A DNA stretch of 64,000 nucleotides from IMGVR_UViG_3300024503_000015:124001-188000; one strand, 5' to 3'. Positions 46,650 through 59,653 are shown, counted from the first letter of the stretch. The notes: generated from the sequence alone by a model not told the origin. Made by a program: numbers and translations.

Positions 46650-47035
46650 TAGAATCTCCCAAGAACTGCACTAGCGGCTTTATCCGCTTGTGTAGCCATT
46701 AATTTCTTTTTAATTTCGCAGTAAGTTTCGCTACCCTGCTTTTCTGTACTGCGTTTATAAAAGTCATCTACAGTTTCCTGCATAGGTTTAACTAACTTAA
46801 GAACGTCCTGTTGACGCCAACCTTTGCTTTCACTATAAAGTTGAAACCATTCTAAATTATCTTTGATAATTTTAACCTGTGGTGCGTGTGCTTGTTTACA
46901 ATCTAATTGTGCTACACTTTGACGCACGTCTATAATACGTGCTGATTGATTAGGATCGCTGAAACTAGGAATCCAACTCTTAACAGTAGCGCAACCTGTT
47001 AATGATATTGCTAATGCTAAGACAAGGGCTCTCAT
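46649..47035 (-). CDS. Lipoprotein
   Basis: Signal MRALVLALAISLTG-C lipobox. Confidence 0.7.
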   Translation of the reverse strand: MRALVLALAISLTGCATVKSWIPSFSDPNQSARIIDVRQSVAQLDCKQAHAPQVKIIKDNLEWFQLYSESKGWRQQDVLKLVKPMQETVDDFYKRSTEKQGSETYCEIKKKLMATQADKAASAVLGRF

Positions 47036-47907
47036 TTTCCATCCTTGACACAGTTATCAACAGTCTTACCGCCTTTCTGTTTGGTACCCATACGTTTGTA
47101 ACCATCCCAGCAAGCCTTACCATCGACACCTTTTTGCTTTTCTTCTGCTAATGTAAGGTAGTCTAAGAAAGATTTTTTAGTTTCCATAGTTGCTGGTTGT
47201 TGCTGTTGTACTACGTGTGTGGCAGCACCGTCAGGAACAGATGCTGTATTAGTTACATTCTTGTTAGCATCTTGTTGACGTCTAACTTTTGCAACACCTA
47301 AATCGTATTCGGCATCACTGGCACCTGTTTCCTTGCCAGTTTTGTCATAGGTCTTAACAACATTTAATGGACCGTTCATATACTTTACAGTAATATTGCC
47401 AGTGACTAAATCGTGTTCCTGACTATAGCCGTTAAACATTGGACTAGAATATTTGATTGCTTTACCTGCTTTGTCGTAGGTAAATGAACCAAACCCGCTA
47501 TCGTGTACTCTAGTACCGTCTTGCTTTACTGTAAGTTTCTCACCGCCTTCTAAATCGTAACGACCTGGTTTAGAAAAATCGCCCTGTGGAAATGCAGGAG
47601 CATTTGGAATTTGTAGATTGGGTTTAAAACCCGGCTCCCCAGGTCTGCCTGCTTCTTCTAGATCGCTGTCTTCTTTTTTATTTGCAGTTTTAATATTATA
47701 CATCTTAGCCACTGCTTTTTCATCATACGGTCTAAAGTCGCTGAGTTTTTCTTTTGCGGCATCAGCGGCAGACGCAACTTTGTCAGCAACTGTTTTTAAT
47801 GTATTGTTTTCCTGCACAATAGACACGAAACGGCGCATGTCATTTGCGCCTTCTACTCTACGACTAGATGCTTTATCTAGTGCTTGTAAAATTTGTTTCA
47901 TGTCCAT
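47032..47907 (-). CDS. Probable capsid-internal protein, modular
   Basis: xxE-type junctions (VQENN, LEEAG, LAEEK); C-terminal CWDGYKRMGTKQKGGKTVDNCV module. Confidence 0.55.
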   Translation of the reverse strand: MDMKQILQALDKASSRRVEGANDMRRFVSIVQENNTLKTVADKVASAADAAKEKLSDFRPYDEKAVAKMYNIKTANKKEDSDLEEAGRPGEPGFKPNLQIPNAPAFPQGDFSKPGRYDLEGGEKLTVKQDGTRVHDSGFGSFTYDKAGKAIKYSSPMFNGYSQEHDLVTGNITVKYMNGPLNVVKTYDKTGKETGASDAEYDLGVAKVRRQQDANKNVTNTASVPDGAATHVVQQQQPATMETKKSFLDYLTLAEEKQKGVDGKACWDGYKRMGTKQKGGKTVDNCVKDGK

Positions 47908-47911
47908 GATA

Positions 47912-49327
47912 TTATAGGCCTGATAAGAATTTCAAACGAGATAAGTCAGTAGATTCTTTAACTGTTTCTTTTTTCTTATCTGCTTTGCCGCCCATTTCGT
48001 CTTTGCCTAAACGACCAGCAACTACATCACCTTTGGTTACTTTGTCATATGGTTTAGCATTGTTGGCTAAGTTACCATCGCCCTTTTTCTTTTCAGCAAC
48101 AACTTTTCTAACAATAGACTTAACTAGGTTAGATTCTTGTACTGCTGGCGTAGGAGCAGTTGTACCACCTTCGGCTTCTAATTTCTTTCTAAGAGCACTA
48201 ATAGTTCTTGCTAAGTTTGTCTTATCGGCACCTGTAGCAGTTTTGTATTGTTCTTCGTATTTTGCGAGTGCTTTTGCAGTTGGGCTATCTGCTTCAGCAC
48301 CTTCTTTAAATGCTGGATTTGTAGGACCAGGAGTCTTTTCGCTCCACTCTTTACCCTTGTTTGGACCAGAAGTTACTTTTGGATACTTGCCAGTCTTTGG
48401 ATCTTTCTTAGGAGCGGCTGTAGCACCATCTGGTGGGCTCATTACTTGACCTTCGTCAGTTTTCTTTTTCTTTTCTGGAAGACCTTTATGCTTTGTACTA
48501 GCAAAGTCTTTGGCATCTTTGTCTTTCATGCCTTTAGCAACTTTAGCAACTTCCTTACTGGCTGGCTTTTCGCCTTTCTTTGCGGCGTGTACCATGCCCA
48601 TAAATTTTTGTTGTGCTTTGCTTACAGCCTTTTCGACTACTTGTGTAAGGGCTTCCTTAATCATCTTGTCTTTTTCTTTCTTGTTCTTGGCGTCTTTTTC
48701 AGCCTTGGCAATTTTTTCTGCGGCTTCGTCGATTTCATCCTTAACACGGATGCTGGCCACAGTCCAACCTGGATTGTCGCGTTTCATACGATCACGTACT
48801 TCGCCTTGGCTTTCGCCTTCGTCGGCAACAGTAGTAACACCACGAGTTTTGTTATCTTTTTCAAGTTTAACAAAGTATTGTTTCTTTTCTGATTTATCAA
48901 CTTGACCTTTCTTTTTGTCAGTTGCACGTACACCAGACGCTTCTTTAACAGCACCTTCTAACAAGGATGCTAATTTTTGTTCATATGTAGTCATTTCGTC
49001 AATTTTCCTTTCTTCGTCATCCATGTCAGACACTGGCTCTTCGCTTGGTAGCTCTTGTTCAGCATCACCTGTAATGTCGTCGATGTTGGATGCGTTGCTG
49101 CCATCGCCGAACTTAACTTGGTACTCCATATAGTGATATACACTATCTAAGTAATCTGCAGATTTAGTAATTTTAGCCTGTACCCAACCTTCTAAATCTT
49201 GTCCGTCTTGAATCATTTGGAACAATTTCATAGAGTACTTTGCGGCTCTATATAGTTCTGAACGTGCCATAGCCCCTTCGTGGTCGTCCACTGGTCCTGG
49301 CATAACTGGTCTCATCTGGTCGTGCAT
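47912..49327 (-). CDS. Probable capsid-internal polyprotein, Lys-rich
   Basis: Modules separated by IDEM, LLEG, VKEA, IDEA, IKEA, TDEG, FKEG, VQES, VKES; late promoter upstream. Confidence 0.6.
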   Translation of the reverse strand: MHDQMRPVMPGPVDDHEGAMARSELYRAAKYSMKLFQMIQDGQDLEGWVQAKITKSADYLDSVYHYMEYQVKFGDGSNASNIDDITGDAEQELPSEEPVSDMDDEERKIDEMTTYEQKLASLLEGAVKEASGVRATDKKKGQVDKSEKKQYFVKLEKDNKTRGVTTVADEGESQGEVRDRMKRDNPGWTVASIRVKDEIDEAAEKIAKAEKDAKNKKEKDKMIKEALTQVVEKAVSKAQQKFMGMVHAAKKGEKPASKEVAKVAKGMKDKDAKDFASTKHKGLPEKKKKTDEGQVMSPPDGATAAPKKDPKTGKYPKVTSGPNKGKEWSEKTPGPTNPAFKEGAEADSPTAKALAKYEEQYKTATGADKTNLARTISALRKKLEAEGGTTAPTPAVQESNLVKSIVRKVVAEKKKGDGNLANNAKPYDKVTKGDVVAGRLGKDEMGGKADKKKETVKESTDLSRLKFLSGL

Positions 49328-49348
49328 GGTTAAAATCTCCTGGTGTTG

Positions 49349-49356
49349 TATTTATC
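49349..49356 (-). promoter_or_regulatory. Late-like promoter GATAAATA
   Basis: Overlaps the CGA-TAA stop of the upstream gene, same arrangement as 12563. Confidence 0.6.
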
Positions 49357-50011
49357 GTTTTGCTATACTGCCGCCTGTTAACAGATTAGCCTTCATATCT
49401 AGGGCATTTTTAGCAGTACCGTCTTTATTTTTAGGTGTTTTTCCGGCTTTATTTTTGTATACAGGACCCACACTAACCATACCTGCACTAGTGCCTCCCG
49501 GTGTTGCAGTTTCGTCAAACTTATCGATTCCACGACTCTGCATTCCGCCCTTCTTACGTTTAGCGGCTAATTCTTCTAAACCGTGACGTACTTGCTCTAA
49601 ATTCTGTTCTAAACCCATGAACATGCCGCCTTTGGCTAACTTAGTAATTTGATGCCAAGTTGCTAGGTCATCGCTTTCTGCCATACGTGCTAATTCTTGT
49701 AACTGTTTACGTGTTTGCAAAATGCGTCCTTTTAACGTCATAGGATTTGCTTTATTGTGACTGTGAATCATAGGATCCATAGGATCATCTGTAGCGGCAA
49801 TAGGTGCTTCTAAGGTAAGTTGATCTGCAACAGTTTCGCTCATCTGTGCCATTTGTACAGCCTGCGCGGCCAATCTTGCAGGAATACCTTCTTTAACAAG
49901 TTTATCCTGTGCTTGTTGTTCGCTTAGTCCTTGTGCTAATAATGCCTTGGCACGTTTAGCCAAAGCCATCATATCAATAACACCTTCGTTTATAATGTCT
50001 ATCAATCTCAT
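49352..50011 (-). CDS. Probable capsid-internal protein
   Basis: N-terminus MRLIDIINEG; internal LTLEA and FDETATPGG. Confidence 0.55.
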   Translation of the reverse strand: MRLIDIINEGVIDMMALAKRAKALLAQGLSEQQAQDKLVKEGIPARLAAQAVQMAQMSETVADQLTLEAPIAATDDPMDPMIHSHNKANPMTLKGRILQTRKQLQELARMAESDDLATWHQITKLAKGGMFMGLEQNLEQVRHGLEELAAKRKKGGMQSRGIDKFDETATPGGTSAGMVSVGPVYKNKAGKTPKNKDGTAKNALDMKANLLTGGSIAKR

Positions 50012-51753
50012 TTCTTTTTTCCTTGACGCATATTAATTTGCCAGTGTGCTAATTGTTTTTTACGTGGACTAGCAGAATCGCTACTGCGTATCTTTTTTAA
50101 CTGTGCTATGCTCATGCCTTTAGTGATGCCGTGACGTTTACTATCACCTTTATCTTGTGGATTTTTTCCATCGGCAAAGTTTTCATCTACATTAAATGTC
50201 GGATCAACTTTTTGACGCGGCATATTCTTAGGCCGCTTTGGATCAACCGGGTCAATGTCTGTGGTATCAAGGCCCAACTTTTTCAAAGCCGCAATATATT
50301 TGTGCTCTTCTTCTTCACTGCCAAAAGATACAATAGTACTAGGAGGCCCTTTACCAAAATCTTTATTTGATAAATTTTTTAAGTTGGCAATATTCTTACC
50401 TAACTTGTACCAATCATACACATCACTTACATCAACTCTAACAGTGCCTCTAGGCATTGTAGGTTTAATTTCAGGACCTCTTGGTTTTTCATTAGGGTGC
50501 TGGTCTTCTTCTGCGTGTTTAAAATATTGTACTTGACGTTCACGTTTCTCTGCACCGGCGCGAGTTGGATACTTACCTAAGTTCTTATTACCATGTTTGC
50601 TTTTTAATTCGTAACCGCCTTTAACTTTAACAATATGTTCGTTAAACTGTTCTGGATTCATTTTACCCCAGTAACGTAGCAATACTCCAGCAAGAGCATT
50701 GGCTTCGTTTTCGTCTGGACTGCCAGTTGCACCATCTAATTCTCTTGCTTCGTTTTGTTTGCGATGCACTAATTCGTGTGCTAGTGTTCGCATAATATCC
50801 ATTTGATGTCTATCTTTAACAGATACAACTATGTCTTGTGTTTCAGGATCAAAGTATCCAAGTGCAGTAGTCTTTGTATCACCTACTAATTTAATACGTG
50901 GTGCTTGTTCTATTTCTAAAAGTTTGATAGCCCATAATGCAAAGTCTTTGATACGTTGCTTTTTATCTGGAGTCCATGCTTCCATCAATCCGCCGCCGTC
51001 ACCGCCGTCTCCCGCAGGCACACTACCTACACCACTGTAGCCTGCATCGGTACCATATAGTCCGTAAGGACCTGGTCCATATAACGCACCGTATTTGTTT
51101 CTGCGTTTTTTCTTACGACCTTCGTCTACATCTTTGTCACCACTAGTGGCAATTAATTTTCCTTGACTTCTATCTAGACTTTTTAACTGCTGTGGTTCGT
51201 GTTCTTCTTCACCTTGTCCCACACGTTTAGCACGTTTAAGTCCATCTAATATTACTTGTAAACTATCTTCGTCTGCTTGATATTTGATACCAATACCGCC
51301 AGCGGCTTCCCAAGCACTGATATTACTACCTCTGTCGTCAATTAATACGTTAGGCATTCCGCTAGGATTTCTAGCGTACTTGGCTTTGTTTGAAACAATG
51401 TAAATGTTGTCTGGCAGTTGATTTAAGTGTTCATCGATCCAAATACGTTTGTATTTTTCACTGCCTTCGTGGTCGCCGCGTAATGGGCTAGAACAAATAT
51501 TGTAGCCACCGGCCACATCAACTACAATATCAATTAGTTTGTCTGCTGTAGGAAACTTTGGTAGACGTGCAAAAAAGTCTGTTCCTACCATTTTGTTTAA
51601 TGTAGGATCAGTCTTCGCTGGTGGAATGTCTCTGTAGTTTCCGCTTTTAATGCCAGCAAGTTTAGCATACTCTGTGAAAAAGTCTGCAAGAACTCCGTCC
51701 ATGTCTACATAGACTTCCATGCCTTGGGGTAATTCTAAATCGCTTGCTCTCAT
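50008..51753 (-). CDS. Multi-module protein: HAD 5'(3')-nucleotidase + HExxH domain + small modules
   Basis: YVDMDGVLADF and LIDDRGSNISAWEAAGGIGI (NT5C-type HAD); RTLAHELVH. Confidence 0.75.
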   Translation of the reverse strand: MRASDLELPQGMEVYVDMDGVLADFFTEYAKLAGIKSGNYRDIPPAKTDPTLNKMVGTDFFARLPKFPTADKLIDIVVDVAGGYNICSSPLRGDHEGSEKYKRIWIDEHLNQLPDNIYIVSNKAKYARNPSGMPNVLIDDRGSNISAWEAAGGIGIKYQADEDSLQVILDGLKRAKRVGQGEEEHEPQQLKSLDRSQGKLIATSGDKDVDEGRKKKRRNKYGALYGPGPYGLYGTDAGYSGVGSVPAGDGGDGGGLMEAWTPDKKQRIKDFALWAIKLLEIEQAPRIKLVGDTKTTALGYFDPETQDIVVSVKDRHQMDIMRTLAHELVHRKQNEARELDGATGSPDENEANALAGVLLRYWGKMNPEQFNEHIVKVKGGYELKSKHGNKNLGKYPTRAGAEKRERQVQYFKHAEEDQHPNEKPRGPEIKPTMPRGTVRVDVSDVYDWYKLGKNIANLKNLSNKDFGKGPPSTIVSFGSEEEEHKYIAALKKLGLDTTDIDPVDPKRPKNMPRQKVDPTFNVDENFADGKNPQDKGDSKRHGITKGMSIAQLKKIRSSDSASPRKKQLAHWQINMRQGKKK

Positions 51754-52037
51754 TTTTTATTTACCGGTTTTTCGCCTGTCATGTAAGGTAAACTAAACCA
51801 TAACTGAAACCACTCAGGTGTTCCAGGTTTAATGTTTTGTTCTCTCTGTATTCTGCCTTTATCACTGCCAGTAACACTGATGTTACTGCCCTGATACTCG
51901 TGTAGTCTTGCGGCATGACCTAAGCCTGCAAGATACTGCATAGATTTAATTTCGTATATAGGATCAGAAGGATCAAGTAAGCAGTCGTCTGGACTGTCTT
52001 GATTTAAATTTTCTGTACTGATTCTATATTGTTTCAT
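51750..52037 (-). CDS. Hypothetical protein, 95 aa
   Basis: Co-oriented in the late cluster. Confidence 0.55.
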   Translation of the reverse strand: MKQYRISTENLNQDSPDDCLLDPSDPIYEIKSMQYLAGLGHAARLHEYQGSNISVTGSDKGRIQREQNIKPGTPEWFQLWFSLPYMTGEKPVNKK

Positions 52038-52040
52038 TTA

Positions 52041-53012
52041 TTATGAAACCTTAACAACAGTAAATCCTGCTTTTACGTAGTGATCGTGAGCATAATTCTT
52101 TGCGTGTTCGCGACCTTTAGTAGTAGTTACACGGGGTGTTCTTTCAACTTCATTTCCGTCCTTGTCAATAAGAGTAAAACGGAATGAATACTCTTCTGGA
52201 TCCGGTCCATTAACATATTCATCATCTTCGCGTTCACGACGTCCAAAGCCTGTGCGACTAGAATCGTAATCGCGTTGATACGCATCGTAACTACCGTAAC
52301 GGCCTTCTTCTAATTCTGACATTTTCATAGCATCTTTTTCCTTCTTAGGTTCTTTTTCTTTTTTAGGCTCTTCTTTTTTCTTAGGTTCTTCTTTTTTCTT
52401 AGAATCTTTTTTCTTTGCTTTTTCCTTCGCCTTTTCTTCATAGGGCATCAAGTACTCGGCAACTAAGTCAAAGAATGGTTTACCCATAACAGGTGTTTCT
52501 GAACTTACGCCAGCGGCATCGCTAAATGCTTGTCTGTCGCCTTTGGCTACTGCTTCACGTAAACTTGTAGCAGAGCTCTTACGTAATTCTAATTTTGCTT
52601 CTTCTATACTGTCGTGGAACAGTCTAATTTCTGGAAAATTGTATTCGCCGTGCGGACCAGACTTTCCATTATAATCTTGTACAGTAGGAACTACCCATGC
52701 TTCGTCAGTAACGATGATTAATTTTACTGCACCGTGTTTCTGATATACATAACTGGCTAATGTTAACCAACTTGTTTCGGCAACAATATGTCCTGTAACA
52801 TCAGGCCAAATAACTTTCATACATTCTGTTTTTACATTGTATGGCAGTGGGTCTTTTGGTCCTACAGTACTTTCATTAGTACCAACGTACCATACATCTT
52901 TAGTAGCGGCAGTTTCCCAAGCGGCTTTATGTCCTTTGTGCGGAGGATTGAATCGACCAAATATAATGGCTACTTCACTTGTTTTATTTTCAAATAAATT
53001 TCTTAATCTCAT
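52041..53012 (-). CDS. HxGH cytidylyl/adenylyltransferase-like protein (NMNAT/PPAT fold)
   Basis: IFGRFNPPHKGH, DPLPYNVK, SSATSLREA; N-terminus MRLRNLFE. Confidence 0.82.
   Translation of the reverse strand: MRLRNLFENKTSEVAIIFGRFNPPHKGHKAAWETAATKDVWYVGTNESTVGPKDPLPYNVKTECMKVIWPDVTGHIVAETSWLTLASYVYQKHGAVKLIIVTDEAWVVPTVQDYNGKSGPHGEYNFPEIRLFHDSIEEAKLELRKSSATSLREAVAKGDRQAFSDAAGVSSETPVMGKPFFDLVAEYLMPYEEKAKEKAKKKDSKKKEEPKKKEEPKKEKEPKKEKDAMKMSELEEGRYGSYDAYQRDYDSSRTGFGRREREDDEYVNGPDPEEYSFRFTLIDKDGNEVERTPRVTTTKGREHAKNYAHDHYVKAGFTVVKVS
52341..52410 (-). repeat. Coding low-complexity repeat KKKEEP/KKEKEP
   Basis: Translation SKKKEEPKKKEEPKKEKEPKKEK. Confidence 0.7.
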
Positions 53013-53013
53013 A

Positions 53014-54162
53014 TTATTCCCCAGGAGTCCACTGGTCTCTGTTTACTAACTTTACATTACCGAATTTCTTTTCAGGGCCAGCATAGCGTACACGACCTTC
53101 TCCGTTTGTGTCCCAGATATCTCCTTGCTCGCCTTCAACCTGTGCAAGTATTTGGTTTTTCATTGATTGTATTTGTTTAACTAGAGAAAATATAGCATCT
53201 ACAGCGTTAGGATGGGCTTCTATTTTAGCCTGTATTTTTTCTTGTTTTCCTGCACTAACTTTTGACTTTTCCAACCATGCGTTAAAATTCTGTAAACCTA
53301 AACTGCTTAACTGTTTAGCTCTTGCTGTTTGATTTACATAGGTGTAGAATATATTCTTAAGGTCACTTAACCCAGCAGTATCGGACAAGAATCCTTCGAT
53401 TTGTTCTGCGTGTTGTTGTGCATAACCTTCAATGTTATCAATCATCTTAGTATCGATACTAACAGATTTTTTATTGTATATCGGACCTTGTACAATTAAT
53501 TTAGGATTAGCATTAAATTGATCAAAATCGTCTAACGGTTCTTGTTCACTGTCATCCATTCCAAATTGTGGGAAATAAGCATGACCGACAACCATTACAT
53601 CTGCATAAGCAATACGCTTACCTAAATCACTGTCGCCTCTGACATGATAACAAGTTTGTGATTTAGGATTTGGACAGAATGTGTATACTCCGTCTTTTAA
53701 ATCGGGCCTGTTTAAAAATAATGCGTCAGCATAGACAAAGCCTACAAAATCTTTTGGAGTTGCCGCATCAAATGCTGGATATAAATTTGCAAACTTGGCG
53801 GCAAATTCTTCACGTTGTTTACGCTCTTCTTCTGTCTTAGGTGTACCGCTCTTGTTAGCAATAAAATCTTTTACTGCTTCTGGATTATCTGTCTTAGCAC
53901 CACGTGCCCAACCGTTGTGTCCTGCTAGAATTAATGGTCCATTCTTTGTTTCACGACCCCAATAGATTTGAGGATTACCGTCCCATTTCATGCGAATGCT
54001 TTCAGAACCTTCTTGTGTAGCGATTTCTTTAACGTGGTCTAATGCTTCGATGGTACCGTCGATGCCGTAGAAGAAAACTAGATCTTCGAGATGGTTGAAT
54101 GCACGGCCCAGTTTCTTTTTAACTGTTTCTGTGGATTCAACAAATAGTTCTCTTAATCTCAT
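53014..54162 (-). CDS. Ligase-type covalent nucleotidyltransferase-like protein (KxDG)
   Basis: NHLEDL and MKWDGNP resemble motif I of RNA/DNA ligases; N-terminus MRLRELFVE. Confidence 0.55.
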   Translation of the reverse strand: MRLRELFVESTETVKKKLGRAFNHLEDLVFFYGIDGTIEALDHVKEIATQEGSESIRMKWDGNPQIYWGRETKNGPLILAGHNGWARGAKTDNPEAVKDFIANKSGTPKTEEERKQREEFAAKFANLYPAFDAATPKDFVGFVYADALFLNRPDLKDGVYTFCPNPKSQTCYHVRGDSDLGKRIAYADVMVVGHAYFPQFGMDDSEQEPLDDFDQFNANPKLIVQGPIYNKKSVSIDTKMIDNIEGYAQQHAEQIEGFLSDTAGLSDLKNIFYTYVNQTARAKQLSSLGLQNFNAWLEKSKVSAGKQEKIQAKIEAHPNAVDAIFSLVKQIQSMKNQILAQVEGEQGDIWDTNGEGRVRYAGPEKKFGNVKLVNRDQWTPGE

Positions 54163-55013
54163 TCTTCGCCCCTTGACTGCTTGGGACCTTTACGTTGTTT
54201 CCATTTTTTATCTGTACTGCACCAGTAACGTCCATAAGTACCTTCTACTACGCCTTGCATCCATGAGAACCATTCGGCAGAACCTTCTTTAACATCTTCA
54301 GGCTTTTTGCCTTCGTTGCCAGGCCAGTTCTCATCGGCTAGTGCGTGTTGAATTTTTGGATTTTGTTCTTTACCTGGTAGTGCGGCAATAATTCTTTCTA
54401 CATTACCTAAGTCAGCGGCAGTAGCATGAGCACCGATTAAAATTTTAGCAACTTCGTCTGCATTGTGAGAAACAAAGTCTGCCTTCTTTCCATTTTCATC
54501 TCGGGCAAACAGCCCTTGGAATCCGCTCCACATTAGTCCGTAAGGATATCTTTGGTTACGAGTTTCTTTAGCAATACTGGAAAGTAGTATGTGCTTATGT
54601 AAACCTTTGAATGGAGTATTTTCAATGCTATAATCGTGTTGATGAAATTTACTAACAGAGCCAGCATCTTTAACAAACATAATATCTGCTTGTGCAAACT
54701 TATCGCCGTTAGGAACTTTAATGTGTACATTGATGCCAGTTAGTGCAGATTCGGTGCCTCTATCTTGAAAGTATGTTTTTAATTTTTGTCTTGCTTCTTT
54801 GGCTGTCTTAACTTTAAAAAAGTCTAACATGGACTGCTCGTCGACCATTAAGTCCATGTCTCCAGAACTGGCTTTATGGCCGGCACTGCCAACAGGAATT
54901 AAATCAATGCCCTGCGGCATCATTGATTGCGCCTTGGCTAGTACTTCCTTGGCTTCATCCTTGCCAAATGGTTCTACATCAGGAAATACATTTCCACCTT
55001 CTAATAGGATCAT
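54159..55013 (-). CDS. Pol-beta superfamily nucleotidyltransferase
   Basis: PVGSAG...SSGDMDLMVD (GS + DxD) and a third Asp in QADIMF; N-terminus MILLEGG. Confidence 0.75.
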   Translation of the reverse strand: MILLEGGNVFPDVEPFGKDEAKEVLAKAQSMMPQGIDLIPVGSAGHKASSGDMDLMVDEQSMLDFFKVKTAKEARQKLKTYFQDRGTESALTGINVHIKVPNGDKFAQADIMFVKDAGSVSKFHQHDYSIENTPFKGLHKHILLSSIAKETRNQRYPYGLMWSGFQGLFARDENGKKADFVSHNADEVAKILIGAHATAADLGNVERIIAALPGKEQNPKIQHALADENWPGNEGKKPEDVKEGSAEWFSWMQGVVEGTYGRYWCSTDKKWKQRKGPKQSRGEE

Positions 55014-55354
55014 TCATCTCTCCCATCATAAACACCGTTTTCGATGTTATGTTTTTCTTCGTGGAACATTTTAACAGCCAAGTCCTGTACTTCTTCGGGA
55101 TCGAATAATACTTTTGGGTTTTGGGTGATTTTGAATTTATTGCAATAAACTGGTATGGCTTTATCGATGCAGGGCATAAATGACATTTCGTTGCACTTGC
55201 CGCCGGATTTCAACTTGCCTTTTAATTCAGCGATTACAGGATAAACTACCTTACGATAAAAACGTGGGTCGTTGTGCATAAAAAACTTTAAATCATCGAC
55301 GAAATCGACGTCTTTAAACTGTTCTGCTTGCTTATCTACATCATTTATTTTCAT
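55010..55354 (-). CDS. Hypothetical protein (start MKINDV)
   Basis: First gene after CATAAATA. Confidence 0.5.
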   Translation of the reverse strand: MKINDVDKQAEQFKDVDFVDDLKFFMHNDPRFYRKVVYPVIAELKGKLKSGGKCNEMSFMPCIDKAIPVYCNKFKITQNPKVLFDPEEVQDLAVKMFHEEKHNIENGVYDGRDE

Positions 55355-55407
55355 ATAATCACCATGTTCTGCATAGAGCCGCGGATATACATACTCCACT
55401 AATAGAG

Positions 55408-55415
55408 TATTTATG
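55408..55415 (-). promoter_or_regulatory. Late-like promoter CATAAATA
   Basis: Intergenic, heads the internal-protein cluster. Confidence 0.5.
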
Positions 55416-55431
55416 CTATTTTACAACTGTA

Positions 55432-56076
55432 TTAAATTTCGCTGATTAGGTACATTTCGTCCACTCTGCGTATCTTATTGCCCAGGAATAGTCTGCACAT
55501 TCCTAGGGTCTTTTCATTTGCGGCGTAAAAGTAGCCTTCGGAGTGGTATGTACGCTTTAGCAGTTTAATGCTGGGAATCTGCTCTGCCCATGCGTGGAAA
55601 CTTTCGCTAGAATCACGTAGAGGATTTACAGTTACTCTATACTTGTGCGTATACTTTTTAGATATAATACAGTTAGGGTTAGTTAATAGAAACTTCCTAA
55701 CTTTATCGTCTGCAGGTTTAGTTACTTCTTTAACATGTCCTAATAGTTGAACAGCATCTAATAAAGAATCACTGTTGGTGTAAATGCTTAATGTGTCGCT
55801 TTCTACACGCAACAAAAAATCAGTTTCTTTATTAAGTAAATCTACAAGTTTGTTTATGTAGATTACATCACTGACTGTAGCATATTTCTTACGCCAGGAT
55901 CTAAGTTGTACTCTACCATCCGGGACGGCTTCAATTTGATCACTAAGAATCTTGATTGAAGCCATTGCCCGAGCGATAGTTCTGCTACGAAACTCCGAAG
56001 CAAAAACATTTATTACACTAATCTTGTTGACATATTTGTCAAAAAACAATTTAGATGTTTGCTTGTACAGTTTCAT
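55432..56076 (-). CDS. Hypothetical protein (start MKLYKQ)
   Basis: Overlaps the clpA 3' end. Confidence 0.55.
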   Translation of the reverse strand: MKLYKQTSKLFFDKYVNKISVINVFASEFRSRTIARAMASIKILSDQIEAVPDGRVQLRSWRKKYATVSDVIYINKLVDLLNKETDFLLRVESDTLSIYTNSDSLLDAVQLLGHVKEVTKPADDKVRKFLLTNPNCIISKKYTHKYRVTVNPLRDSSESFHAWAEQIPSIKLLKRTYHSEGYFYAANEKTLGMCRLFLGNKIRRVDEMYLISEI

Positions 56077-58291
56077 TCTGTAATTCGAGTTTAATTTCAT
56101 CGTCTTCAACATTGATGTTTACTGCTCCACCCTGTTTCAGACCACCAAACAACATAAGTTTGGATAATGGACGCTTAATATCCTTATCGATTACACGTTG
56201 CAATGGGCGAGCACCCATCTTCTTATCAAAGCCCTTATCTACCAAGTAGTCAATTGCTTCGTTGCTGATTGTAATCTTAATGCCCTTATCCTTGACCTGT
56301 GTTTTTAACTCAACTAAGAACTTGCCAACAATTTTAATCATTGTTTCTTTGCTTAGTTTACCAAATGTAACAACACCATCTAAACGATTGCGGAACTCTG
56401 GAGCGAAGAATTTCTTAAGTTCTTTATCTTCGTAGTCATTATCTTGACTACCAAAACCAATAACGTTCTTTTCAGCATCTTGTGCGCCAAGGTTAGTAGT
56501 CATAATCAAAATAATGTTACGAGCATCTGCTACTTTACCATTAGATCCTGTTACAAAACCATTGTCCATAATCTGTAATAGGATAGTTGCTACATCTGGA
56601 TGTGACTTTTCAATTTCGTCTAACAATAGAACACAATGTGGATTCTCTTGTAGTTTAGTAATCAACAAGCCAGCGTTTTCTTCAAAGCCAACATATCCAG
56701 GAGGGCTACCAATCAACTTAGATACGCTGTGTTTTTCTTGATACTCCGACATGTCAAAGCGAATAAGTGGAACACCTAACTGTTTACTAAGTTGTTTTGC
56801 GGCTTCAGTCTTACCAACACCAGTTGGCCCCATGAATACAAAACTACCCACTGGTTTATTATCAGATTTAAGTCCTGCTTGTGCTACAAGAATCTTATCA
56901 ACGATTTCGTCAATGGCTTCATCTTGCCCATAAACTTCACCTTTAAGGTTCTTTTCAAGGTTAACAAGATTTTCGTTTTCTTTTTCCTTGACTGTGTCTT
57001 CGGGAAGTTTAACCATTTTTGCTAATTCGTATTGAATCTCAGGAACATCGACAATCTTATGTTCTGCGTTCTTAATATTGAAACGACTACAAGCCACATC
57101 AATTAGATCAATTGCTTTATCTGGTAATTTCTTATCTGTCATATATTTTACAGATAATTTAACTGCTGTTTCAATAGCCGCATCTGTAATTTCAGCACCG
57201 TGATGTTTTTCGTAATACTTCTTAATACCTTTAAGAATATCTACTGCTACTTCTGGAGTAGGCTCGTCAACAGTGATGCGTTGGAAACGGCGCATTAACG
57301 CACGATCCTTTTCAAAGTACTTACGATATTCTTCCCAAGTAGTAGATGCAACTACTTTAATGTTGCCTTTGCTTAGAGCAGGCTTCATCATATTAGCCAA
57401 GTCATTGGCATTACCTTGTCCACCTGCGCCTGCGCCACTAATCATGTGTGCTTCATCGATGAACAATACAGTTTTGCCTTTGCCTGTTAGTGCCTTAAGT
57501 ACTAATTTAAAACGTTCTTCAAAGTCACCGCGATATTTACTACCAGCAAGCATAGCACTAATGTCTAAGTTATAGACTGTATATTCTTTTAAGAAGTCAG
57601 GAACAGCACCATTAATAATATTATGTGCTAGGCCTTCTGCGATAGCAGTCTTACCTACACCAGGGTCGCCTACTAACAATACATTATTTTTAGTTCTGCG
57701 ACCGAGCCCTAGCGCAATTTGTTCTAGTTCTTCAGTTCTACCGATAACTGGATCGATTTTATTTTTCTTGACTTGGTCATTGAGGTTAGTAGTAAATGCT
57801 TTCAGTGCTTTTTCACTTTGTGCATCTGTGACCTGTTCTTCTTCGTCTTCATCGATTTCGCTGTTAATAAAATCAGCAAACTTTTCACGATCCACGCCGC
57901 CCTTATTAATATAGAATACAGCGTAACTGCGCTTTTCGCTAAGTGCGCTCATAAACACATCTACAAGCTCAATGCTTTGACGTCCGCTGAAAAGGACTTG
58001 TGTGAATGCACGATTAAGAACACGCTCAACAGTTTGAGTCTTCTTAGGTTTAAATCCTTTGGGAATTGGATCTATTTTAATTTCGTCTAATTGATTTTTA
58101 AGATAGTGTTCGAGATTCTTTTTAATGTAATCCCCGTCACCACCGAAGTTTACAAGAAGTTCGTAGAACTTTTCTTCGCAGAGCATAGCAAAAATAAGAT
58201 GCTCTAGCGTGACATATTCGTGTCCTAATTTTTTACAGTCTGCAACAGCCTTTTCAAAAACTACTTGCAGTTGATCACTTGGTTCTACCAT
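56051..58291 (-). CDS. clpA: ATP-dependent Clp protease ATP-binding subunit ClpA
   Basis: Clp N-domain; GDPGVGKT/FIDEAH; pore loop GSKYRGDFEER; GPTGVGKT/LLDEIEK; GYVG; IGF ClpP-docking loop; no ClpB middle domain. Confidence 0.93.
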   Translation of the reverse strand: MVEPSDQLQVVFEKAVADCKKLGHEYVTLEHLIFAMLCEEKFYELLVNFGGDGDYIKKNLEHYLKNQLDEIKIDPIPKGFKPKKTQTVERVLNRAFTQVLFSGRQSIELVDVFMSALSEKRSYAVFYINKGGVDREKFADFINSEIDEDEEEQVTDAQSEKALKAFTTNLNDQVKKNKIDPVIGRTEELEQIALGLGRRTKNNVLLVGDPGVGKTAIAEGLAHNIINGAVPDFLKEYTVYNLDISAMLAGSKYRGDFEERFKLVLKALTGKGKTVLFIDEAHMISGAGAGGQGNANDLANMMKPALSKGNIKVVASTTWEEYRKYFEKDRALMRRFQRITVDEPTPEVAVDILKGIKKYYEKHHGAEITDAAIETAVKLSVKYMTDKKLPDKAIDLIDVACSRFNIKNAEHKIVDVPEIQYELAKMVKLPEDTVKEKENENLVNLEKNLKGEVYGQDEAIDEIVDKILVAQAGLKSDNKPVGSFVFMGPTGVGKTEAAKQLSKQLGVPLIRFDMSEYQEKHSVSKLIGSPPGYVGFEENAGLLITKLQENPHCVLLLDEIEKSHPDVATILLQIMDNGFVTGSNGKVADARNIILIMTTNLGAQDAEKNVIGFGSQDNDYEDKELKKFFAPEFRNRLDGVVTFGKLSKETMIKIVGKFLVELKTQVKDKGIKITISNEAIDYLVDKGFDKKMGARPLQRVIDKDIKRPLSKLMLFGGLKQGGAVNINVEDDEIKLELQNETVQANI

Positions 58292-58802
58292 TTAATTTCC
58301 TCTGTTTTTTCAGTGCTAAATCTAACTTTAACTTACTTACTCTTTTGGTAAAAGTAATGCCGTCTAAGTGGTCAATTTCATGTTGAATACACTTGGCGTC
58401 ATAACCACTTAATGTAATTGTACATTCTTTTGCTGTCTTGTCAAGATATTTTATTGTAATATTATTAAATCTGTTAATCTTTATGAACAAATTTGGAAAA
58501 CTCAAACAGCCTTCCTCGTCTATACACTCGTCGGATCCGCTGACAATTTCGGGATTAAACATGGCAAATGGTTCTTGCCCACTAGGTTTGACTACAACAA
58601 CTCTGCGATCAAATCCAACTTGATTAGCGGCAATGCCGATGCCACGGCCGCCTAGCATTATCTCGACCATGGCTTGTTCTATTTGGTTAGGATCGATGCC
58701 GCAATTAAAATCAAAGGGCTCTAATTTTGTATAGAGTATTGGGTCTGGATCTGTTCTAAGATAAAAATCTTTAGGTTCTGTAACGGTCTGAAAGTTGCTC
58801 AA
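58275..58802 (-). CDS. def: Peptide deformylase (start uncertain; TTG at 58802 proposed)
   Basis: [22 protein letters not shown]. Confidence 0.93.
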
Positions 58803-59595
58803 TTTGAATCTTATCTTCCGTGAATAGTATTTTGGGAATTGTAATTTGTACTTGTATAAACAAATTTCCTCTTTGATGATTGTGTGGACCGACTGGAAGT
58901 CCGTAACTATCACACTTAATCATTTGACTAGGTTGTATGCCTGCCGGAACTTTGATTTCTAATTCTTTGTCTTCTAATGTTTTAAAGCGGATTGTTTTTC
59001 CTAACATAGCATCAAACGCAGAAATTTCTACTTCTGCATATAAGTTCCTGCCATCACGTTTGAATCTTGGATGTGGAAGTTCAATAATTTGTGCTATTAC
59101 ATCGCCCCTAGGCATATTAGGAATGCTGTCGTCTCCTAATCCTCTAAAACGAATTGAGTCACCGTTTTGTACACCTGCAGGAATACTTAATTGTAGTGCC
59201 TGTTCTTTTCCACTAGGTAATCTGATACTGCCAGTAACTTCTTTGCCGACAAGTATTTCTTCTAAAGTCATTTCGACACGGATATTGATATTCCTGTTCT
59301 TTCTGGACTGCTGTCTAAAGCCAGCACCAAAGGGATTAGCACCAAACATGGCACCAAACAAATCATTCATGTCGTTCATATTGCCAGTATGAAAACTATA
59401 CTGTGGCATTGGGTTGTCGTATTGAGCTCGTTTTTGGTCATCACTAAGGGTGCGATATGCTTCTTCAATTTGTTGAAATTTAGAAGTATCGCCGCCTCTG
59501 TCAGGATGGTGCTTTGAAGCCAATTTACGATATGCTTTTTTGATATCGTCTTGGCTAGCAGATTTTGAAACTCCTAGTATTGAATAATAATCCAT
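58771..59595 (-). CDS. dnaJ: DnaJ-class co-chaperone without Zn finger (CbpA/type II-like)
   Basis: J-domain with HPD, G/F-rich linker, C-terminal DnaJ domains; no CxxCxGxG. Confidence 0.92.
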
Positions 59596-59606
59596 AGTGT
59601 ATGATG

Positions 59607-59640
59607 AAAAAAGGTATAGTAGTAATTATACTATACCTTT
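59607..59640 (-). terminator. 12-bp inverted repeat/terminator of the lysis unit, overlapping the -10 box
   Basis: AAAGGTATAGTA-7 nt-TACTATACCTTT followed by T-run on the minus strand. Confidence 0.7.
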
Positions 59641-59653
59641 CTTAGGATGTCAA
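59625..59653 (-). promoter_or_regulatory. Consensus sigma70 promoter of dnaJ-def-clpA
   Basis: TTGACA-17 nt-TATAAT exact. Confidence 0.85.

What the first reader, a model, noticed from the sequence alone, without database searches (positions are those of the whole stretch)
52041..55013. Three different nucleotidyltransferase folds in tandem, each with a capsid-targeting-like leader
Seen: a Pol-beta-type NTase (GS...DxD), a KxDG ligase-like protein and an HxGH adenylyl/cytidylyltransferase are consecutive genes. Established: Pol-beta NTases include CCA-adding and signal-making enzymes; KxDG enzymes seal RNA breaks (T4 Rnl1 against PrrC); HxGH NMNAT-like enzymes rebuild NAD+ in phage NAD-reconstitution pathways. 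Inference: an injected counter-defence kit (tRNA/RNA repair and/or NAD+ restoration, or host-protein nucleotidylation) that acts before phage gene expression.
Basis: partly seen in the sequence, partly recalled or inferred. Interest (0 to 1): 0.72.

Follow-up and report, generated by a model that had tools for sequence, protein, structure and literature searches.

The report
Capsid-targeted polymerase–ligase–adenylyltransferase enzyme trio
A giant T4-like phage encodes three linked nucleotide-transfer enzymes (a DNA-polymerase-X-like protein, an RNA-ligase-like protein and an NMN-adenylyltransferase-like protein); two of them clearly carry the kind of N-terminal tag that phage T4 uses to load proteins into its head, so they are probably injected with the DNA as a ready-made nucleic-acid repair kit.

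Summary
The three genes are real, intact and consecutive on the minus strand: 54159-55013, 53014-54162 and 52041-53012. Their catalytic motifs are invariant or nearly so in the aligned homologues. The genome is a 270-kb T4-like virus with a Gp23 capsid protein and a gp21-type prohead protease.

- **Identities, refined.** The 'Pol-beta NTase' is a minimal family-X-polymerase-like protein (palm plus thumb, like ASFV Pol X). The KWDG protein is DUF6267, a very divergent RNA-ligase-like enzyme. The HxGH protein is nearest to NadM/NadR-type NMN adenylyltransferases.
- **New finding.** The three form one module. They keep this order in 45 of 80 related viral loci. They are fused into single polypeptides, in several orders, in 51 of 150 family representatives.
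- **Leaders.** DUF6267 (MRLRELFVE) and HxGH (MRLRNLFE) carry leaders like the T4 capsid targeting sequence MKTYQEFIAE. The NTase has only MILLE.
- **Support for packaging.** The operon follows a late-promoter-like motif. Polyprotein junctions carry gp21-type L-x-E sites. Leader-bearing HxGH homologues were found in purified virions of cyanophages S-SM1 and S-SZBM1.

Packaging is probable. The biochemical role (fill-and-seal repair) is inferred. Counter-defence is untested.

The parts
55407..55414 (-). Late-promoter-like motif ATAAATAC heading the operon
   Evidence: Genome-wide, NTAAATA lies 8-90 nt upstream of same-strand ORF starts at 41 of 111 sites, against 4.9 expected. It precedes sheath, baseplate, adaptor and other structural genes. 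Position.
55010..55354 (-). First gene of the operon (114 aa from the ATG at 55354), unknown function
   Evidence: No Pfam or PHROG match. Recurs upstream of the module in 31 of 71 related loci.
54159..55013 (-). Family-X-polymerase-like nucleotidyltransferase (palm + thumb), 284 aa. GS at 54885-54890, DMD at 54852-54860, D110 inside 54681-54689. Start MILLE at 54999-55013.
   Evidence: AlphaFold model pLDDT 83. Best matches are Pol lambda, Pol beta, ASFV PolX, TthPolX and TdT over about 160-175 residues, Z 10-11. Other NTases match only the ~95-residue palm core. Motifs invariant.
53014..54162 (-). DUF6267, RNA-ligase-like covalent nucleotidyltransferase, 382 aa. Leader MRLRELFVE at 54136-54162, KWDG at 53977-53988, EG at 53095-53100, KLVNR at 53038-53052.
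   Evidence: PF19782 E 2.8e-16. Model pLDDT 94, with residues 1-3 and 5-11 under 50. VIA top hits are RNA/DNA ligase and capping enzyme domains, Z 5-6.8. AFDB hit to an 'RNA ligase domain-containing protein', E 4e-4.
52041..53012 (-). HxGH (NMNAT-like) adenylyltransferase, 323 aa. Leader MRLRNLFE at 52989-53012, HKGH at 52929-52940, SSATSLR at 52557-52577. Lys/Glu-rich linker and small C-terminal domain at 52041-52424.
   Evidence: PHROG 3041/395 'cytidyltransferase', E 4e-16. Profile against PDB: NadM NMNAT 2.4e-5, MJ0541 NMNAT, NadR. Motif conservation.
51750..52037 (-). 95-aa protein of the same operon; shares a G[ST]xEWF motif with the NTase tail
   Evidence: Recurs in 25 of 71 related loci.
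50008..51753 (-). 581-aa leader-bearing protein (MRASDLE): NT5C-type HAD phosphatase domain + Gly-rich linker + HExxH metalloprotease-like domain
   Evidence: Pfam NT5C 1.7e-5, PHROG 2643 9e-20, metalloprotease families weak. VDE|G and LME|A sites flank the linker. Only the protease and C-terminal parts recur near the module elsewhere.
49352..50011 (-). 219-aa basic protein with leader MRLIDIINE
   Evidence: pI 9.5. Recurs in 17 of 71 related loci.
49348..49355 (-). Second late-promoter-like ATAAATAC, upstream of the 471-aa Lys/Glu-rich DUF3008 protein (47912-49327)

Best explanation
The three genes encode one conserved enzyme module.
- A minimal family-X-polymerase-like nucleotidyltransferase adds nucleotides to a 3' end.
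- A divergent RNA-ligase-like enzyme (DUF6267) seals through a Lys59-AMP intermediate.
- An NMNAT-like HxGH adenylyltransferase has an unknown partner reaction. It may make or recycle an adenylylated cofactor, or act on an adenylylated end.

In this T4-like jumbo phage the module is transcribed from a late promoter. DUF6267 and the HxGH enzyme, and probably the NTase, carry short N-terminal propeptides of the T4 capsid-targeting type. These would take them into the prohead core, where the gp21-type protease cuts after the Glu of L/I/F-x-E. The mature enzymes would then stay in the head with the DNA and enter the cell with it. There they could fill and seal breaks in nucleic acid before any phage gene is expressed. 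The substrate would most simply be the incoming phage genome, or else broken host or phage RNA.

**Shown:** the motifs, the folds, the fusions, the synteny, the leader pattern, the protease gene and the late-promoter motif. Published proteomes show that leader-bearing HxGH homologues are in virions.

**Inferred:** targeting and cleavage in this phage, injection, the substrates and the repair role.
For: **Module**
- 51 of 150 DUF6267 representatives are fused to NT and/or HxGH domains in five different domain orders.
- P0266 is NT + DUF6267 + CTP_transf_like in one chain.
- Atlas clusters show NT+DUF6267 and NT+HxGH fusions.
- 45 of 80 viral loci keep the order NT | LIG | HxGH, and 28 more keep NT | LIG.
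- DUF6267 is followed by the cytidyltransferase in S-CAM4, S-RSM4 and S-SZBM1. The same order holds in S-SM1 and, with one small gene between, in Melnitz.

**Folds**
- PolX matches at Z 10-11, agreeing.
- Ligase-like matches.
- NMNAT profile hits.

**Targeting**
- T4 IPII and IPIII start MKTYQEFIAE. gp21 cuts after L/I-x-E, and the first 10 residues of IPIII suffice for packaging (PMC9026906).
- Genome: Peptidase_S77 and Gp23. The capsid protein's N-terminus has LLE|S, LLE|G and LSE|S.
- Leaders are present on 38 of 41 distinct LIG N-termini and 27 of 29 HxGH N-termini in related loci. They are absent from leaderless stand-alone homologues, so they are a detachable add-on.
- [LIMVF]xE[AGS] lies within 30 residues before 39 of 46 internal LIG domains, against 0.15 expected per window.
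- Leader residues are low-confidence in the DUF6267 model.
- Late-promoter motif.

**Virion proteomes**
- S-SZBM1_140 (starts MRFRQFIIEA) was detected. Its leaderless DUF6267 neighbour _141 is not listed (PMC9146016).
- S-SM1 T4-GC190 (starts MKKFSAFLNEA) was detected (PMC3037559).

**Precedent**
- ASFV virions carry Pol X, ligase and AP endonuclease (PMC12172490).
Against: - There is no proteome, N-terminal sequence or activity for this phage or for any NT or DUF6267 protein.
- The NTase has no full leader. Its L-x-E-GGN start is also conserved inside polyproteins, so it may be structural.
- Many cyanophage homologues lack leaders and sit among replication genes. The module therefore also works unpackaged.
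- The ligase assignment rests on modest scores: Z below 8, and Foldseek against PDB found nothing at E <= 0.001.
- The HxGH hits to NMNATs cover mainly the first ~55 residues.
- The role of the HxGH enzyme in a repair scheme is unexplained.
- The complex prediction for the three proteins gave no answer.
- The early sigma-70 operon upstream could read through into these genes; no strong terminator separates them.
Confidence: 0.5

Rival explanations
1. The trio is an ordinary intracellular replication or repair accessory module that acts in the infected cell and is not injected. The N-terminal motif then serves something else, such as assembly with a partner, recognition by the neighbouring ClpA-like unfoldase, or localisation.
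For: Leaderless homologues sit among gp43, uvsX, gp41 and gp61 in cyanophages. In this window the cluster lies near the DNA polymerase gene at 40529-43198. A ClpA-like gene lies directly upstream, and that adjacency recurs in 31 of 71 loci.
Against: The leader matches the T4 capsid targeting pattern. Similar N-termini occur on two proteins of the head-gene module. Leader-bearing HxGH homologues are found in virions (PMC9146016, PMC3037559). L-x-E sites sit at polyprotein junctions. A late-promoter motif precedes the operon.
Confidence: 0.22
2. The kit repairs tRNA or other RNA cut by anticodon nucleases. A more specific form: the PolX-like enzyme refills a nucleotide removed by an RloC-type nuclease, and DUF6267 then seals the break.
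For: The best fold matches of DUF6267 are RNA ligases: REL1, NgrRnl, T4 Rnl2 and Trl1, and 'RNA ligase domain' proteins. NTase plus RNA ligase is the logic of the trypanosome editosome (established knowledge). Relatives of the HxGH domain are fused to AAA_33/Zeta-type kinases and to a PAP2 phosphatase.
Against: The genome already has an Rnl1/gp63-like ligase next to an AAA_33 kinase. The NTase resembles DNA polymerases of family X more than RNA-specific NTases. There is no kinase in the module here.
Confidence: 0.15
3. NAD+ restoration: the HxGH enzyme is an NMN adenylyltransferase that rebuilds NAD+ after NADase defences, and the other two enzymes are unrelated.
For: The profile of the HxGH domain hits NadM, archaeal and NadR NMNAT structures best, at E 2.4e-5 to 4e-4. 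It carries the GRFxPxHxGH and SxTxxR motifs.
Against: No Nampt (NAPRTase family) is in the 270-kb record, though the record is about 71% complete. The HxGH domain is repeatedly fused to the NT and ligase-like domains, which a free-standing NAD pathway does not explain. The matches cover mostly the motif region.
Confidence: 0.08
4. Signal synthesis or nucleotidylation of host proteins by the NTase (CD-NTase-like or Fic/AMPylase-like action).
For: The Pol-beta NTase core also matches CD-NTases and OAS, at Z 6-7.6.
Against: Those matches cover only ~95 residues of the palm. Family X polymerases match palm plus thumb at Z 10-11. The fusion partners are nucleic-acid enzymes.
Confidence: 0.05

Closest known systems
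T4 internal proteins IPI-III and Alt with their capsid targeting sequence (CTS)
   Same: A short N-terminal leader of the form M-[KR]-..-E-h-h-x-E, a gp21-type protease in the genome, late expression, and diverse cargo behind a conserved leader (PMC9026906, PMC3012670).
   Different: The cargo here is a set of nucleic-acid enzymes rather than small basic anti-restriction proteins or an ADP-ribosyltransferase. The leader is one residue shorter. Neither targeting nor cleavage has been shown for this phage.
ASFV virion-packaged base excision repair set (Pol X O174L, ligase NP419L, AP endonuclease E296R)
   Same: A minimal palm + thumb family X polymerase together with a ligase, carried in the virion to repair viral DNA before replication (PMC12172490). 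ASFV PolX aligns over 158 of its 176 residues, Z 10.3.
   Different: That is a eukaryotic virus with a canonical DNA ligase and an AP endonuclease. Here the sealing enzyme is RNA-ligase-like, the third enzyme is NMNAT-like, and packaging is inferred.
Pfam DUF6267 and the cyanophage 'cytidylyltransferase' (T4-GC190)
   Same: Direct homologues and the same gene order. The HxGH protein is a known virion component in S-SM1 and S-SZBM1 (PMC3037559, PMC9146016).
   Different: No function has been assigned to either family. No NTase partner was found in any deposited phage record searched. Neither the fusion evidence nor the leader has been described, and no paper in the searched library mentions DUF6267.
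Multi-enzyme end-repair machines: bacterial LigD (polymerase-phosphoesterase-ligase), T4 Pnkp + Rnl1, Pnkp/Hen1, trypanosome editosome (TUTase + REL1)
   Same: A nucleotide-adding enzyme coupled or fused to a Lys-AMP ligase. The best structural hits of DUF6267 include REL1, Rnl2 and Pnkp-C.
   Different: Different polymerase fold from LigD (PolX-like, not AEP). No kinase or phosphoesterase in the conserved core. An extra HxGH domain with no counterpart in those systems.
Phage NAD+ reconstitution pathway 2 (Nampt + NMNAT, e.g. KVP40 NadV/NatV)
   Same: An HxGH enzyme whose nearest solved relatives are NadM/NadR NMNATs.
   Different: No Nampt and no Nudix domain. The domain is coupled to a polymerase-like and a ligase-like enzyme instead.

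Membership tests
Family X DNA polymerase (Pol beta/lambda/ASFV Pol X) | Pol-beta-type palm with G-S and three catalytic carboxylates | tested here: met
   G42-S43, D52, D54 and D110 are invariant in 26 homologues.
Family X DNA polymerase (Pol beta/lambda/ASFV Pol X) | Palm followed by the PolX thumb subdomain | tested here: met
   160-175 residues (model 10-206) align to the palm + thumb of Pol beta, lambda, ASFV PolX, TthPolX and TdT at Z 10-11. Other NTases align only ~95 residues. Foldseek agrees.
Family X DNA polymerase (Pol beta/lambda/ASFV Pol X) | Recognised by the family's sequence models (PF14791/PF14792) | tested here: not met
   No Pfam family at E <= 0.1 for this protein. Only 10-17% of members of some related Atlas clusters carry DNA_pol_B_palm.
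Family X DNA polymerase (Pol beta/lambda/ASFV Pol X) | 8-kDa dRP-lyase and fingers (HhH) domains | tested here: not met
   The protein starts at the palm. ASFV Pol X lacks these domains too, so they are not universal.
Family X DNA polymerase (Pol beta/lambda/ASFV Pol X) | Templated gap-filling DNA synthesis | not testable with these tools
   Needs an enzyme assay.
Covalent nucleotidyltransferases (ATP-dependent RNA/DNA ligases, capping enzymes) | Motif I KxDG with the nucleophilic lysine | tested here: met
   K59, D61 and G62 are invariant and W60 is kept in at least 90% of 47-49 homologues down to 20% identity.
Covalent nucleotidyltransferases (ATP-dependent RNA/DNA ligases, capping enzymes) | Motifs IV (EG) and V (K-x-K/R) downstream | tested here: met
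   E355-G356 are invariant. K371, V373 and R375 are nearly invariant, 16 residues later. Assigning them to motifs IV and V is by pattern, not by superposition.
Covalent nucleotidyltransferases (ATP-dependent RNA/DNA ligases, capping enzymes) | Nucleotidyltransferase domain fold | tested here: inconclusive
   18 of the 20 best VIA hits are ligase or capping domains, but at Z 5-6.8. Foldseek against PDB: nothing at E <= 0.001. AFDB cluster 'RNA ligase domain-containing protein', E 4e-4. A ~110-residue helical insert (about residues 235-345) is atypical.
Covalent nucleotidyltransferases (ATP-dependent RNA/DNA ligases, capping enzymes) | Self-adenylylation and nick sealing | not testable with these tools
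   Needs an enzyme assay.
Pfam DUF6267 (PF19782) | Score above the curated cut-off | tested here: met
   60.3 bits against a cut-off of 27, E 2.8e-16.
HxGH nucleotidylyltransferases, NMNAT (NadM/NadR) type | (H/T)xGH motif in a GxFxPxHxGH context | tested here: met
   FGRFNPPHKGH. G19, F21, P23, P24, G27 and H28 are invariant. Cyanophages have TTGH.
HxGH nucleotidylyltransferases, NMNAT (NadM/NadR) type | Second motif ISxTxxR | tested here: met
   SSATSLR at residues 146-152. T149 is invariant; S147 and R152 are nearly invariant.
HxGH nucleotidylyltransferases, NMNAT (NadM/NadR) type | Sequence-model membership | tested here: inconclusive
   Pfam CTP_transf_like scores 16.1 bits, below the cut-off of 21. 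PHROG 'cytidyltransferase', E 4e-16. Profile against PDB: NadM 2.4e-5, MJ0541 3.6e-4, NadR 4.3e-4, mostly over residues 13-70.
HxGH nucleotidylyltransferases, NMNAT (NadM/NadR) type | NMN + ATP to NAD+ activity | not testable with these tools
   Needs an enzyme assay.
T4-type capsid-targeted (CTS) head proteins | N-terminal ~10-residue leader ending in L/I-x-E | tested here: met
   MRLRELFVE|S and MRLRNLFE|N, compared with T4 MKTYQEFIAE|A. For the NTase only MILLE|G, which is ambiguous.
T4-type capsid-targeted (CTS) head proteins | gp21-type prohead protease in the same genome | tested here: met
   Peptidase_S77, 91 bits, at C1:101154-101615. The capsid protein's N-terminus has L-x-E sites.
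T4-type capsid-targeted (CTS) head proteins | Late expression | tested here: inconclusive
   A late-promoter-like ATAAATAC lies at 55407-55414, and the motif is validated on structural genes. There are no transcript data.
T4-type capsid-targeted (CTS) head proteins | Presence in virions and removal of the leader | not testable with these tools
   Only by analogy: leader-bearing HxGH homologues occur in S-SZBM1 and S-SM1 virions (PMC9146016, PMC3037559).
NAD+ reconstitution pathway 2 (Nampt + NMNAT) | A Nampt (NAPRTase family) partner gene | tested here: not met
   No PF04095 match in the 270-kb record. The control genomes do match. The record is about 71% complete.

The most novel reading that the evidence does not exclude
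T4-like phages of aquatic bacteria load a complete polymerase X-like / RNA-ligase-like / NMNAT-like repair machine into their heads. It is loaded either as three CTS-tagged proteins or as one polyprotein that the prohead protease cuts at L-x-E junctions. It is injected with the genome so that breaks from sunlight, oxidation or host nucleases are filled and sealed before the first phage gene is read. This would be a phage counterpart of the repair enzymes packaged by ASFV and giant viruses. It would also be the first function for DUF6267 and for the cyanophage core 'cytidylyltransferase'.
Probability: 0.3. Interest if true: 0.8.

Novelty: new variant of a known kind. Interest (0 to 1): 0.68.

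Why it matters
- It links three families of unknown function into one module that can be tested. These are an unnamed PolX-like phage NTase, Pfam DUF6267, and the cyanophage core 'cytidylyltransferase' seen in virion proteomes since 2010.
- It proposes that the T4 capsid-targeting system delivers whole enzyme sets, not only small inhibitors, in abundant environmental phages.
- If packaging and repair are confirmed, it would show that phages, like large eukaryotic DNA viruses, carry pre-made genome repair enzymes.
- It would also provide natural leader sequences for loading enzymes into T4-like heads.

Tried and rejected
- Nucleotide search of the region against deposited phages: no match.
- tblastn of the NTase against phages: no match.
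- Sequence search of the three proteins against PDB chains: nothing significant for single sequences.
- Foldseek of the DUF6267 model against PDB: no hit at E <= 0.001.
It was re-run without them.
- Canonical T4 late promoter TATAAATA: only 8 sites, not gene-linked. It was replaced by the enriched NTAAATA.
- Three-chain complex prediction: no answer, so it counts neither way.
- Idea that the leader is a DNA or RNA regulatory element: rejected, because codons and upstream sequences differ.
- Idea that the HAD phosphatase of p581 is a conserved end-healing partner: rejected, because that domain is confined to near-identical loci.
- Scaffold identity of the 363-aa protein between protease and capsid genes: not confirmed by homology, only by position.
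- C1:236733-237659 (MRLAELK...) looked like a leader gene but is an Rnl1/gp63 homologue. It does not fit the strict pattern.
- Literature searches for DUF6267 and for the three enzyme names together found nothing relevant.


Full report
**Setting.** The window is bases 124001-188000 of a single 270,181-bp IMG/VR virus record. The record is 39.5% G+C and CheckV rates it about 71% complete. It is a T4-like phage. It has a Gp23-family major capsid protein (E 3e-97), a gp21-type prohead protease (Peptidase_S77, 91 bits), a portal, and sheath, baseplate and adaptor genes. The finding covers three minus-strand genes whose stops and starts overlap or abut: 54159-55013 (284 aa), 53014-54162 (382 aa) and 52041-53012 (323 aa).

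**The observation.**
- In 26 homologues of the first protein, G42, S43, D52, D58 and D110 are invariant and D54 is kept in at least 90%.
- In 47-49 homologues of the second, down to 20% identity, H24, K59, D61, G62, G69, K335, E355 and G356 are invariant. W60, R70, D146, K371 and R375 are nearly so.
- In the third, G19, F21, P23, P24, G27, H28 and T149 are invariant, and S147 and R152 nearly so.
- I checked the motif coordinates by translation.

**What each protein is.**

*NTase.* It has no Pfam or PHROG family. An AlphaFold model (pLDDT 83) matches family X DNA polymerases best in three independent searches.
- Foldseek against PDB puts Pol lambda first, E 1.5e-6.
- Foldseek against Swiss-Prot models gives Pol lambda, Pol beta and B. 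subtilis PolX over their palm and thumb.
- The Foldseek-independent VIA search gives Pol beta, ASFV Pol X (158 of 176 residues), Pol lambda, T. thermophilus PolX, TdT and Leishmania Pol beta as its eight best hits, at Z 9.9-11.1 over 158-176 aligned residues.
- TUTases, poly(A) polymerases, CD-NTases, OAS and CCA-adding enzymes reach Z 8.9 or less over about 95 residues.

So it is a minimal palm + thumb protein of the ASFV Pol X type, not a CCA-adding or signalling NTase. It fails the Pfam PolX sequence models, so this is a resemblance of fold and active site, not proven membership.

*KWDG protein.* It belongs to Pfam DUF6267 (E 2.8e-16). A confident model (pLDDT 94) finds nothing significant with Foldseek in the PDB. 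In the VIA search, however, 18 of the 20 best hits are nucleotidyltransferase domains of RNA ligases (T. brucei REL1, Naegleria Rnl, T4 Rnl2, fungal Trl1), DNA ligases and capping enzymes, at Z 5-6.8. AlphaFold DB clusters named 'RNA ligase domain-containing protein' match at E 4e-4. Viral RNA ligases follow weakly in BFVD. With KxDG, EG and a downstream K-x-x-x-R conserved, a very divergent RNA-ligase-like enzyme with a ~110-residue helical insert is the best reading. The fold scores alone are modest.

*HxGH protein.* It matches PHROGs called cytidyltransferase (E 4e-16) and is below the Pfam cut-off on its own. A profile of its domain hits NadM, archaeal and NadR NMN adenylyltransferases first among solved structures (E 2.4e-5 to 4e-4). 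It carries GRFNPPHKGH and SSATSLR. Residues 196-323 are a Lys/Glu-rich linker and a small domain found only in close relatives.

**The three are one module.** This is the main new result.
- Among 150 representatives (50% identity clusters) of the DUF6267 family, 99 are stand-alone. There are 18 NT-LIG, 12 LIG-HxGH, 12 NT-LIG-HxGH, 5 LIG-NT and 4 HxGH-NT-LIG. Individual cases were checked by Pfam, profile-profile comparison (99.1%) and BLASTP.
- The ESM Atlas independently shows clusters of NT+DUF6267 and NT+CTP_transf_like. It also shows HxGH fused to AAA_33/Zeta-type kinases, NTP_transf_2 and PAP2.
- Fusions in several orders mean repeated independent joining, the classic sign of enzymes that work together.
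- In 80 IMG/VR loci holding an NT homologue (down to 40% identity), 45 have NT | LIG | HxGH in this order on one strand. Another 28 have NT | LIG, and many of those are cut by contig ends.
- The pair DUF6267 then cytidyltransferase is also syntenic in cultured Kyanoviridae: S-CAM4, S-RSM4, S-SZBM1, S-SM1 and, with a small gene between, the methylophage Melnitz.
- The NT gene has no match in deposited phage genomes.

**The leaders.**
- T4 IPII and IPIII begin MKTYQEFIAE.
- According to PMC9026906, the first ten residues of IPIII suffice for head incorporation, and gp21 cuts after Glu in L/I-x-E.
- Here DUF6267 begins MRLRELFVE|S and HxGH begins MRLRNLFE|N. Four other genes in the genome share the pattern: MRLIDIINE|G, MRAKEFIDE|S, MRLREITE|N and MRAKEFIKE|A. 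p581 has the looser MRASDLE|L.
- A strict pattern occurs only six times among all Met-initiated open frames of 60 aa or more in six frames, always at a predicted gene start. A looser one occurs at 9 N-termini against 0.6-1.3 expected.
- The codons and the DNA upstream differ, so selection is on the peptide.
- In the related loci, 38 of 41 distinct LIG N-termini and 27 of 29 HxGH N-termini carry the leader. The consensus is M-R-[LA]-[RL]-E-[LF]-[LF]-x-E for LIG and M-[RK]-L-R-Q-L-F-E for HxGH.
- Other stand-alone homologues simply start a few residues before the conserved core without it. The leader is thus an optional add-on, and in the DUF6267 model it is the low-confidence N-terminal stretch.
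- Two head-module proteins have similar N-termini: a 79-aa protein beside the portal (MILRELFYF) and the protein in the scaffold position (MLDALKSLFENN). The capsid protein's N-terminus holds LLE|S, LLE|G and LSE|S.
- The NTase is different. It starts MILLE-GGN. A few homologues have a longer leader in front (MFIKEILLE-GGN, MRLYEVYQNIRKPIME-GGN). But h-L-x-E-GGN is also kept where the NT domain is internal. It is therefore either a protease site at the domain border or the first strand of the fold.

**Polyprotein junctions.** In 39 of 46 proteins where the LIG domain is internal, a [LIMVF]-x-E-[AGS] motif lies within 30 residues before the conserved His, in most of them 8-14 residues before it. 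Examples are LQE|A, VTE|A, LTE|G and LLE|A. The expectation is 0.15 per window. Leaderless stand-alone proteins lack the motif. This is what one would see if the fused forms are cut into separate enzymes by a gp21-type protease inside the prohead. It also explains why the split genes each need a leader of their own. Within the three proteins here, further such sites lie only in low-confidence tails or linkers: NTase residues 241 and 255, and HxGH residue 234.

**Timing.**
- NTAAATA is the most enriched word upstream of genes.
- 41 of its 111 occurrences lie 8-90 nt upstream of a same-strand start, against 4.9 expected.
- The genes behind it include tail sheath, baseplate wedge and hub, a virion structural protein, the head-tail adaptor and fibre-like proteins. 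It behaves as the T4-type late promoter.
- One copy (55407-55414) sits in the short gap in front of the 114-aa gene that opens the operon: p114, NT, LIG, HxGH, p95, p581, p219. Another copy (49348-49355) precedes the next gene.
- Upstream lies an early-type operon with a perfect TTGACA-17-TATAAT promoter (59653-59625). It encodes DnaJ, peptide deformylase and a ClpA-like ATPase. Read-through cannot be excluded.

**Experimental support from relatives.**
- In cyanophage S-SZBM1, LC-MS of CsCl-purified virions found 'one enzyme (cytidylyltransferase)', S-SZBM1_140 (PMC9146016). I translated it: it starts MRFRQFIIEA, then a spacer, then FGRFNPPHAGH.
- Its DUF6267 neighbour _141 starts MAKNTHLEHLED without a leader and is not in the paper's table.
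- In S-SM1, the virion proteome contained 'a putative citidylyltransferase (T4-GC190)' (PMC3037559). SSM1_190 starts MKKFSAFLNEA, and its DUF6267 neighbour has no leader.
- That makes two independent proteomes. In both, the leader-bearing copy is in the particle.

**Mechanism and its limits.** A PolX-like enzyme coupled to a Lys-AMP ligase is the universal fill-and-seal pair. It recurs in base excision repair, end joining, LigD and the RNA editosome. ASFV packages Pol X, ligase and AP endonuclease in its virions so that viral DNA can be repaired before replication (PMC12172490). I therefore take a head-packaged, co-injected fill-and-seal kit as the most likely reading.
- Whether the substrate is DNA or RNA is open. 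The polymerase side looks DNA-like and the ligase side RNA-like.
- The HxGH enzyme has no assigned step. It might recycle an adenylylated cofactor or act on adenylylated ends, but that is speculation.
- The genome also has a canonical DNA ligase and an Rnl1/gp63-like ligase next to an AAA_33 kinase, so the module is not the phage's only ligase.
- No Nampt was found, which weakens the NAD+ restoration idea.
- The HAD phosphatase domain of p581 is not a conserved partner.
- A three-chain complex prediction gave no answer.

**Verdict.** The leader claim holds for two of the three genes. The injection idea gains real, though indirect, support. The enzyme identities are refined. The module character (fusion and synteny) is new. 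The function remains inferred. I found no paper describing DUF6267 or this enzyme trio.

Noticed in passing
window 85-12567 (+): A single 4160-aa open reading frame with no Pfam family at E <= 1e-5. It is followed by a gene with a phage tail collar domain (13209-15521) and two more large unknown genes. Two of the downstream genes, 12592-13206 and 17422-19365, are preceded by the late-promoter-like motif. Probably a giant fibre or baseplate protein.
   Followed up: partly
window 56051-59653 (-): An early-type operon with a perfect sigma-70 promoter (TTGACA-17-TATAAT, 59653-59625). It encodes a DnaJ homologue, a peptide deformylase and a ClpA-like double-AAA unfoldase. It sits directly upstream of the late operon, and the ClpA-like gene recurs next to the module in 31 of 71 related loci.
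   Followed up: partly
window 50008-51753 (-): A leader-bearing 581-aa protein. It joins an NT5C-type HAD nucleotidase or phosphatase domain to an HExxH metalloprotease-like domain through a Gly-rich linker flanked by VDE|G and LME|A sites. Only the protease and C-terminal parts recur in other phages. It could be a packaged protease.
   Followed up: partly
window 47912-49327 (-): A 471-aa Lys/Glu-rich basic protein with a DUF3008 segment and its own late-promoter-like motif. It carries seven h-x-E-[AGS] sites. It may be a DNA-associated internal head protein.
   Followed up: no
window 54159-55013 (res 244-249) and 51750-52037 (res 72-77): A shared G[ST]xEWF motif lies near the C-terminus of the NTase and of the 95-aa protein. 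It is also conserved in NTase homologues (GTNEWF). Meaning unknown.
   Followed up: no
genome C1:236087-237659 (outside the window): A T4 gp63/Rnl1-like RNA ligase (PHROG 562, E 2.5e-50) lies next to an AAA_33 kinase. This is the canonical tRNA-repair pair, separate from the module. A canonical ATP-dependent DNA ligase lies at C1:225298-225855.
   Followed up: partly
genome C1:98731-105106 (outside the window): The head module, in order: portal, a 79-aa protein starting MILRELFYF, two further genes (191 and 260 aa), protease, a 363-aa scaffold-position protein starting MLDALKSLFENN, then the capsid protein with three L-x-E sites in its first 41 residues. The leader-like N-termini occur on likely prohead core proteins.
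   Followed up: partly
genome C1:35126-35482, C1:21527-22126, C1:267056-267592 (outside the window): Three more small proteins of unknown function carry the strict leader: MRAKEFIDES, MRLREITENR and MRAKEFIKEA. The first lies just downstream of the head-tail adaptor gene. They are candidate internal proteins.
   Followed up: no
L024 (S-SZBM1) 6989-8362 and window 47032-47907: The virion protein S-SZBM1_139 shares a 26-residue stretch (62% identity) with the C-terminal end of the 291-aa protein of this window.
   Followed up: no
L028 (Melnitz EXVC044M) 1284-5947: Four consecutive genes start with T4-CTS-like leaders: MQGFKTFLSEA, MLTLINFSKYITE, MKKFSELTSE and MKKFSEIIEA. They include the DUF6267 and HxGH homologues.
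   Followed up: partly
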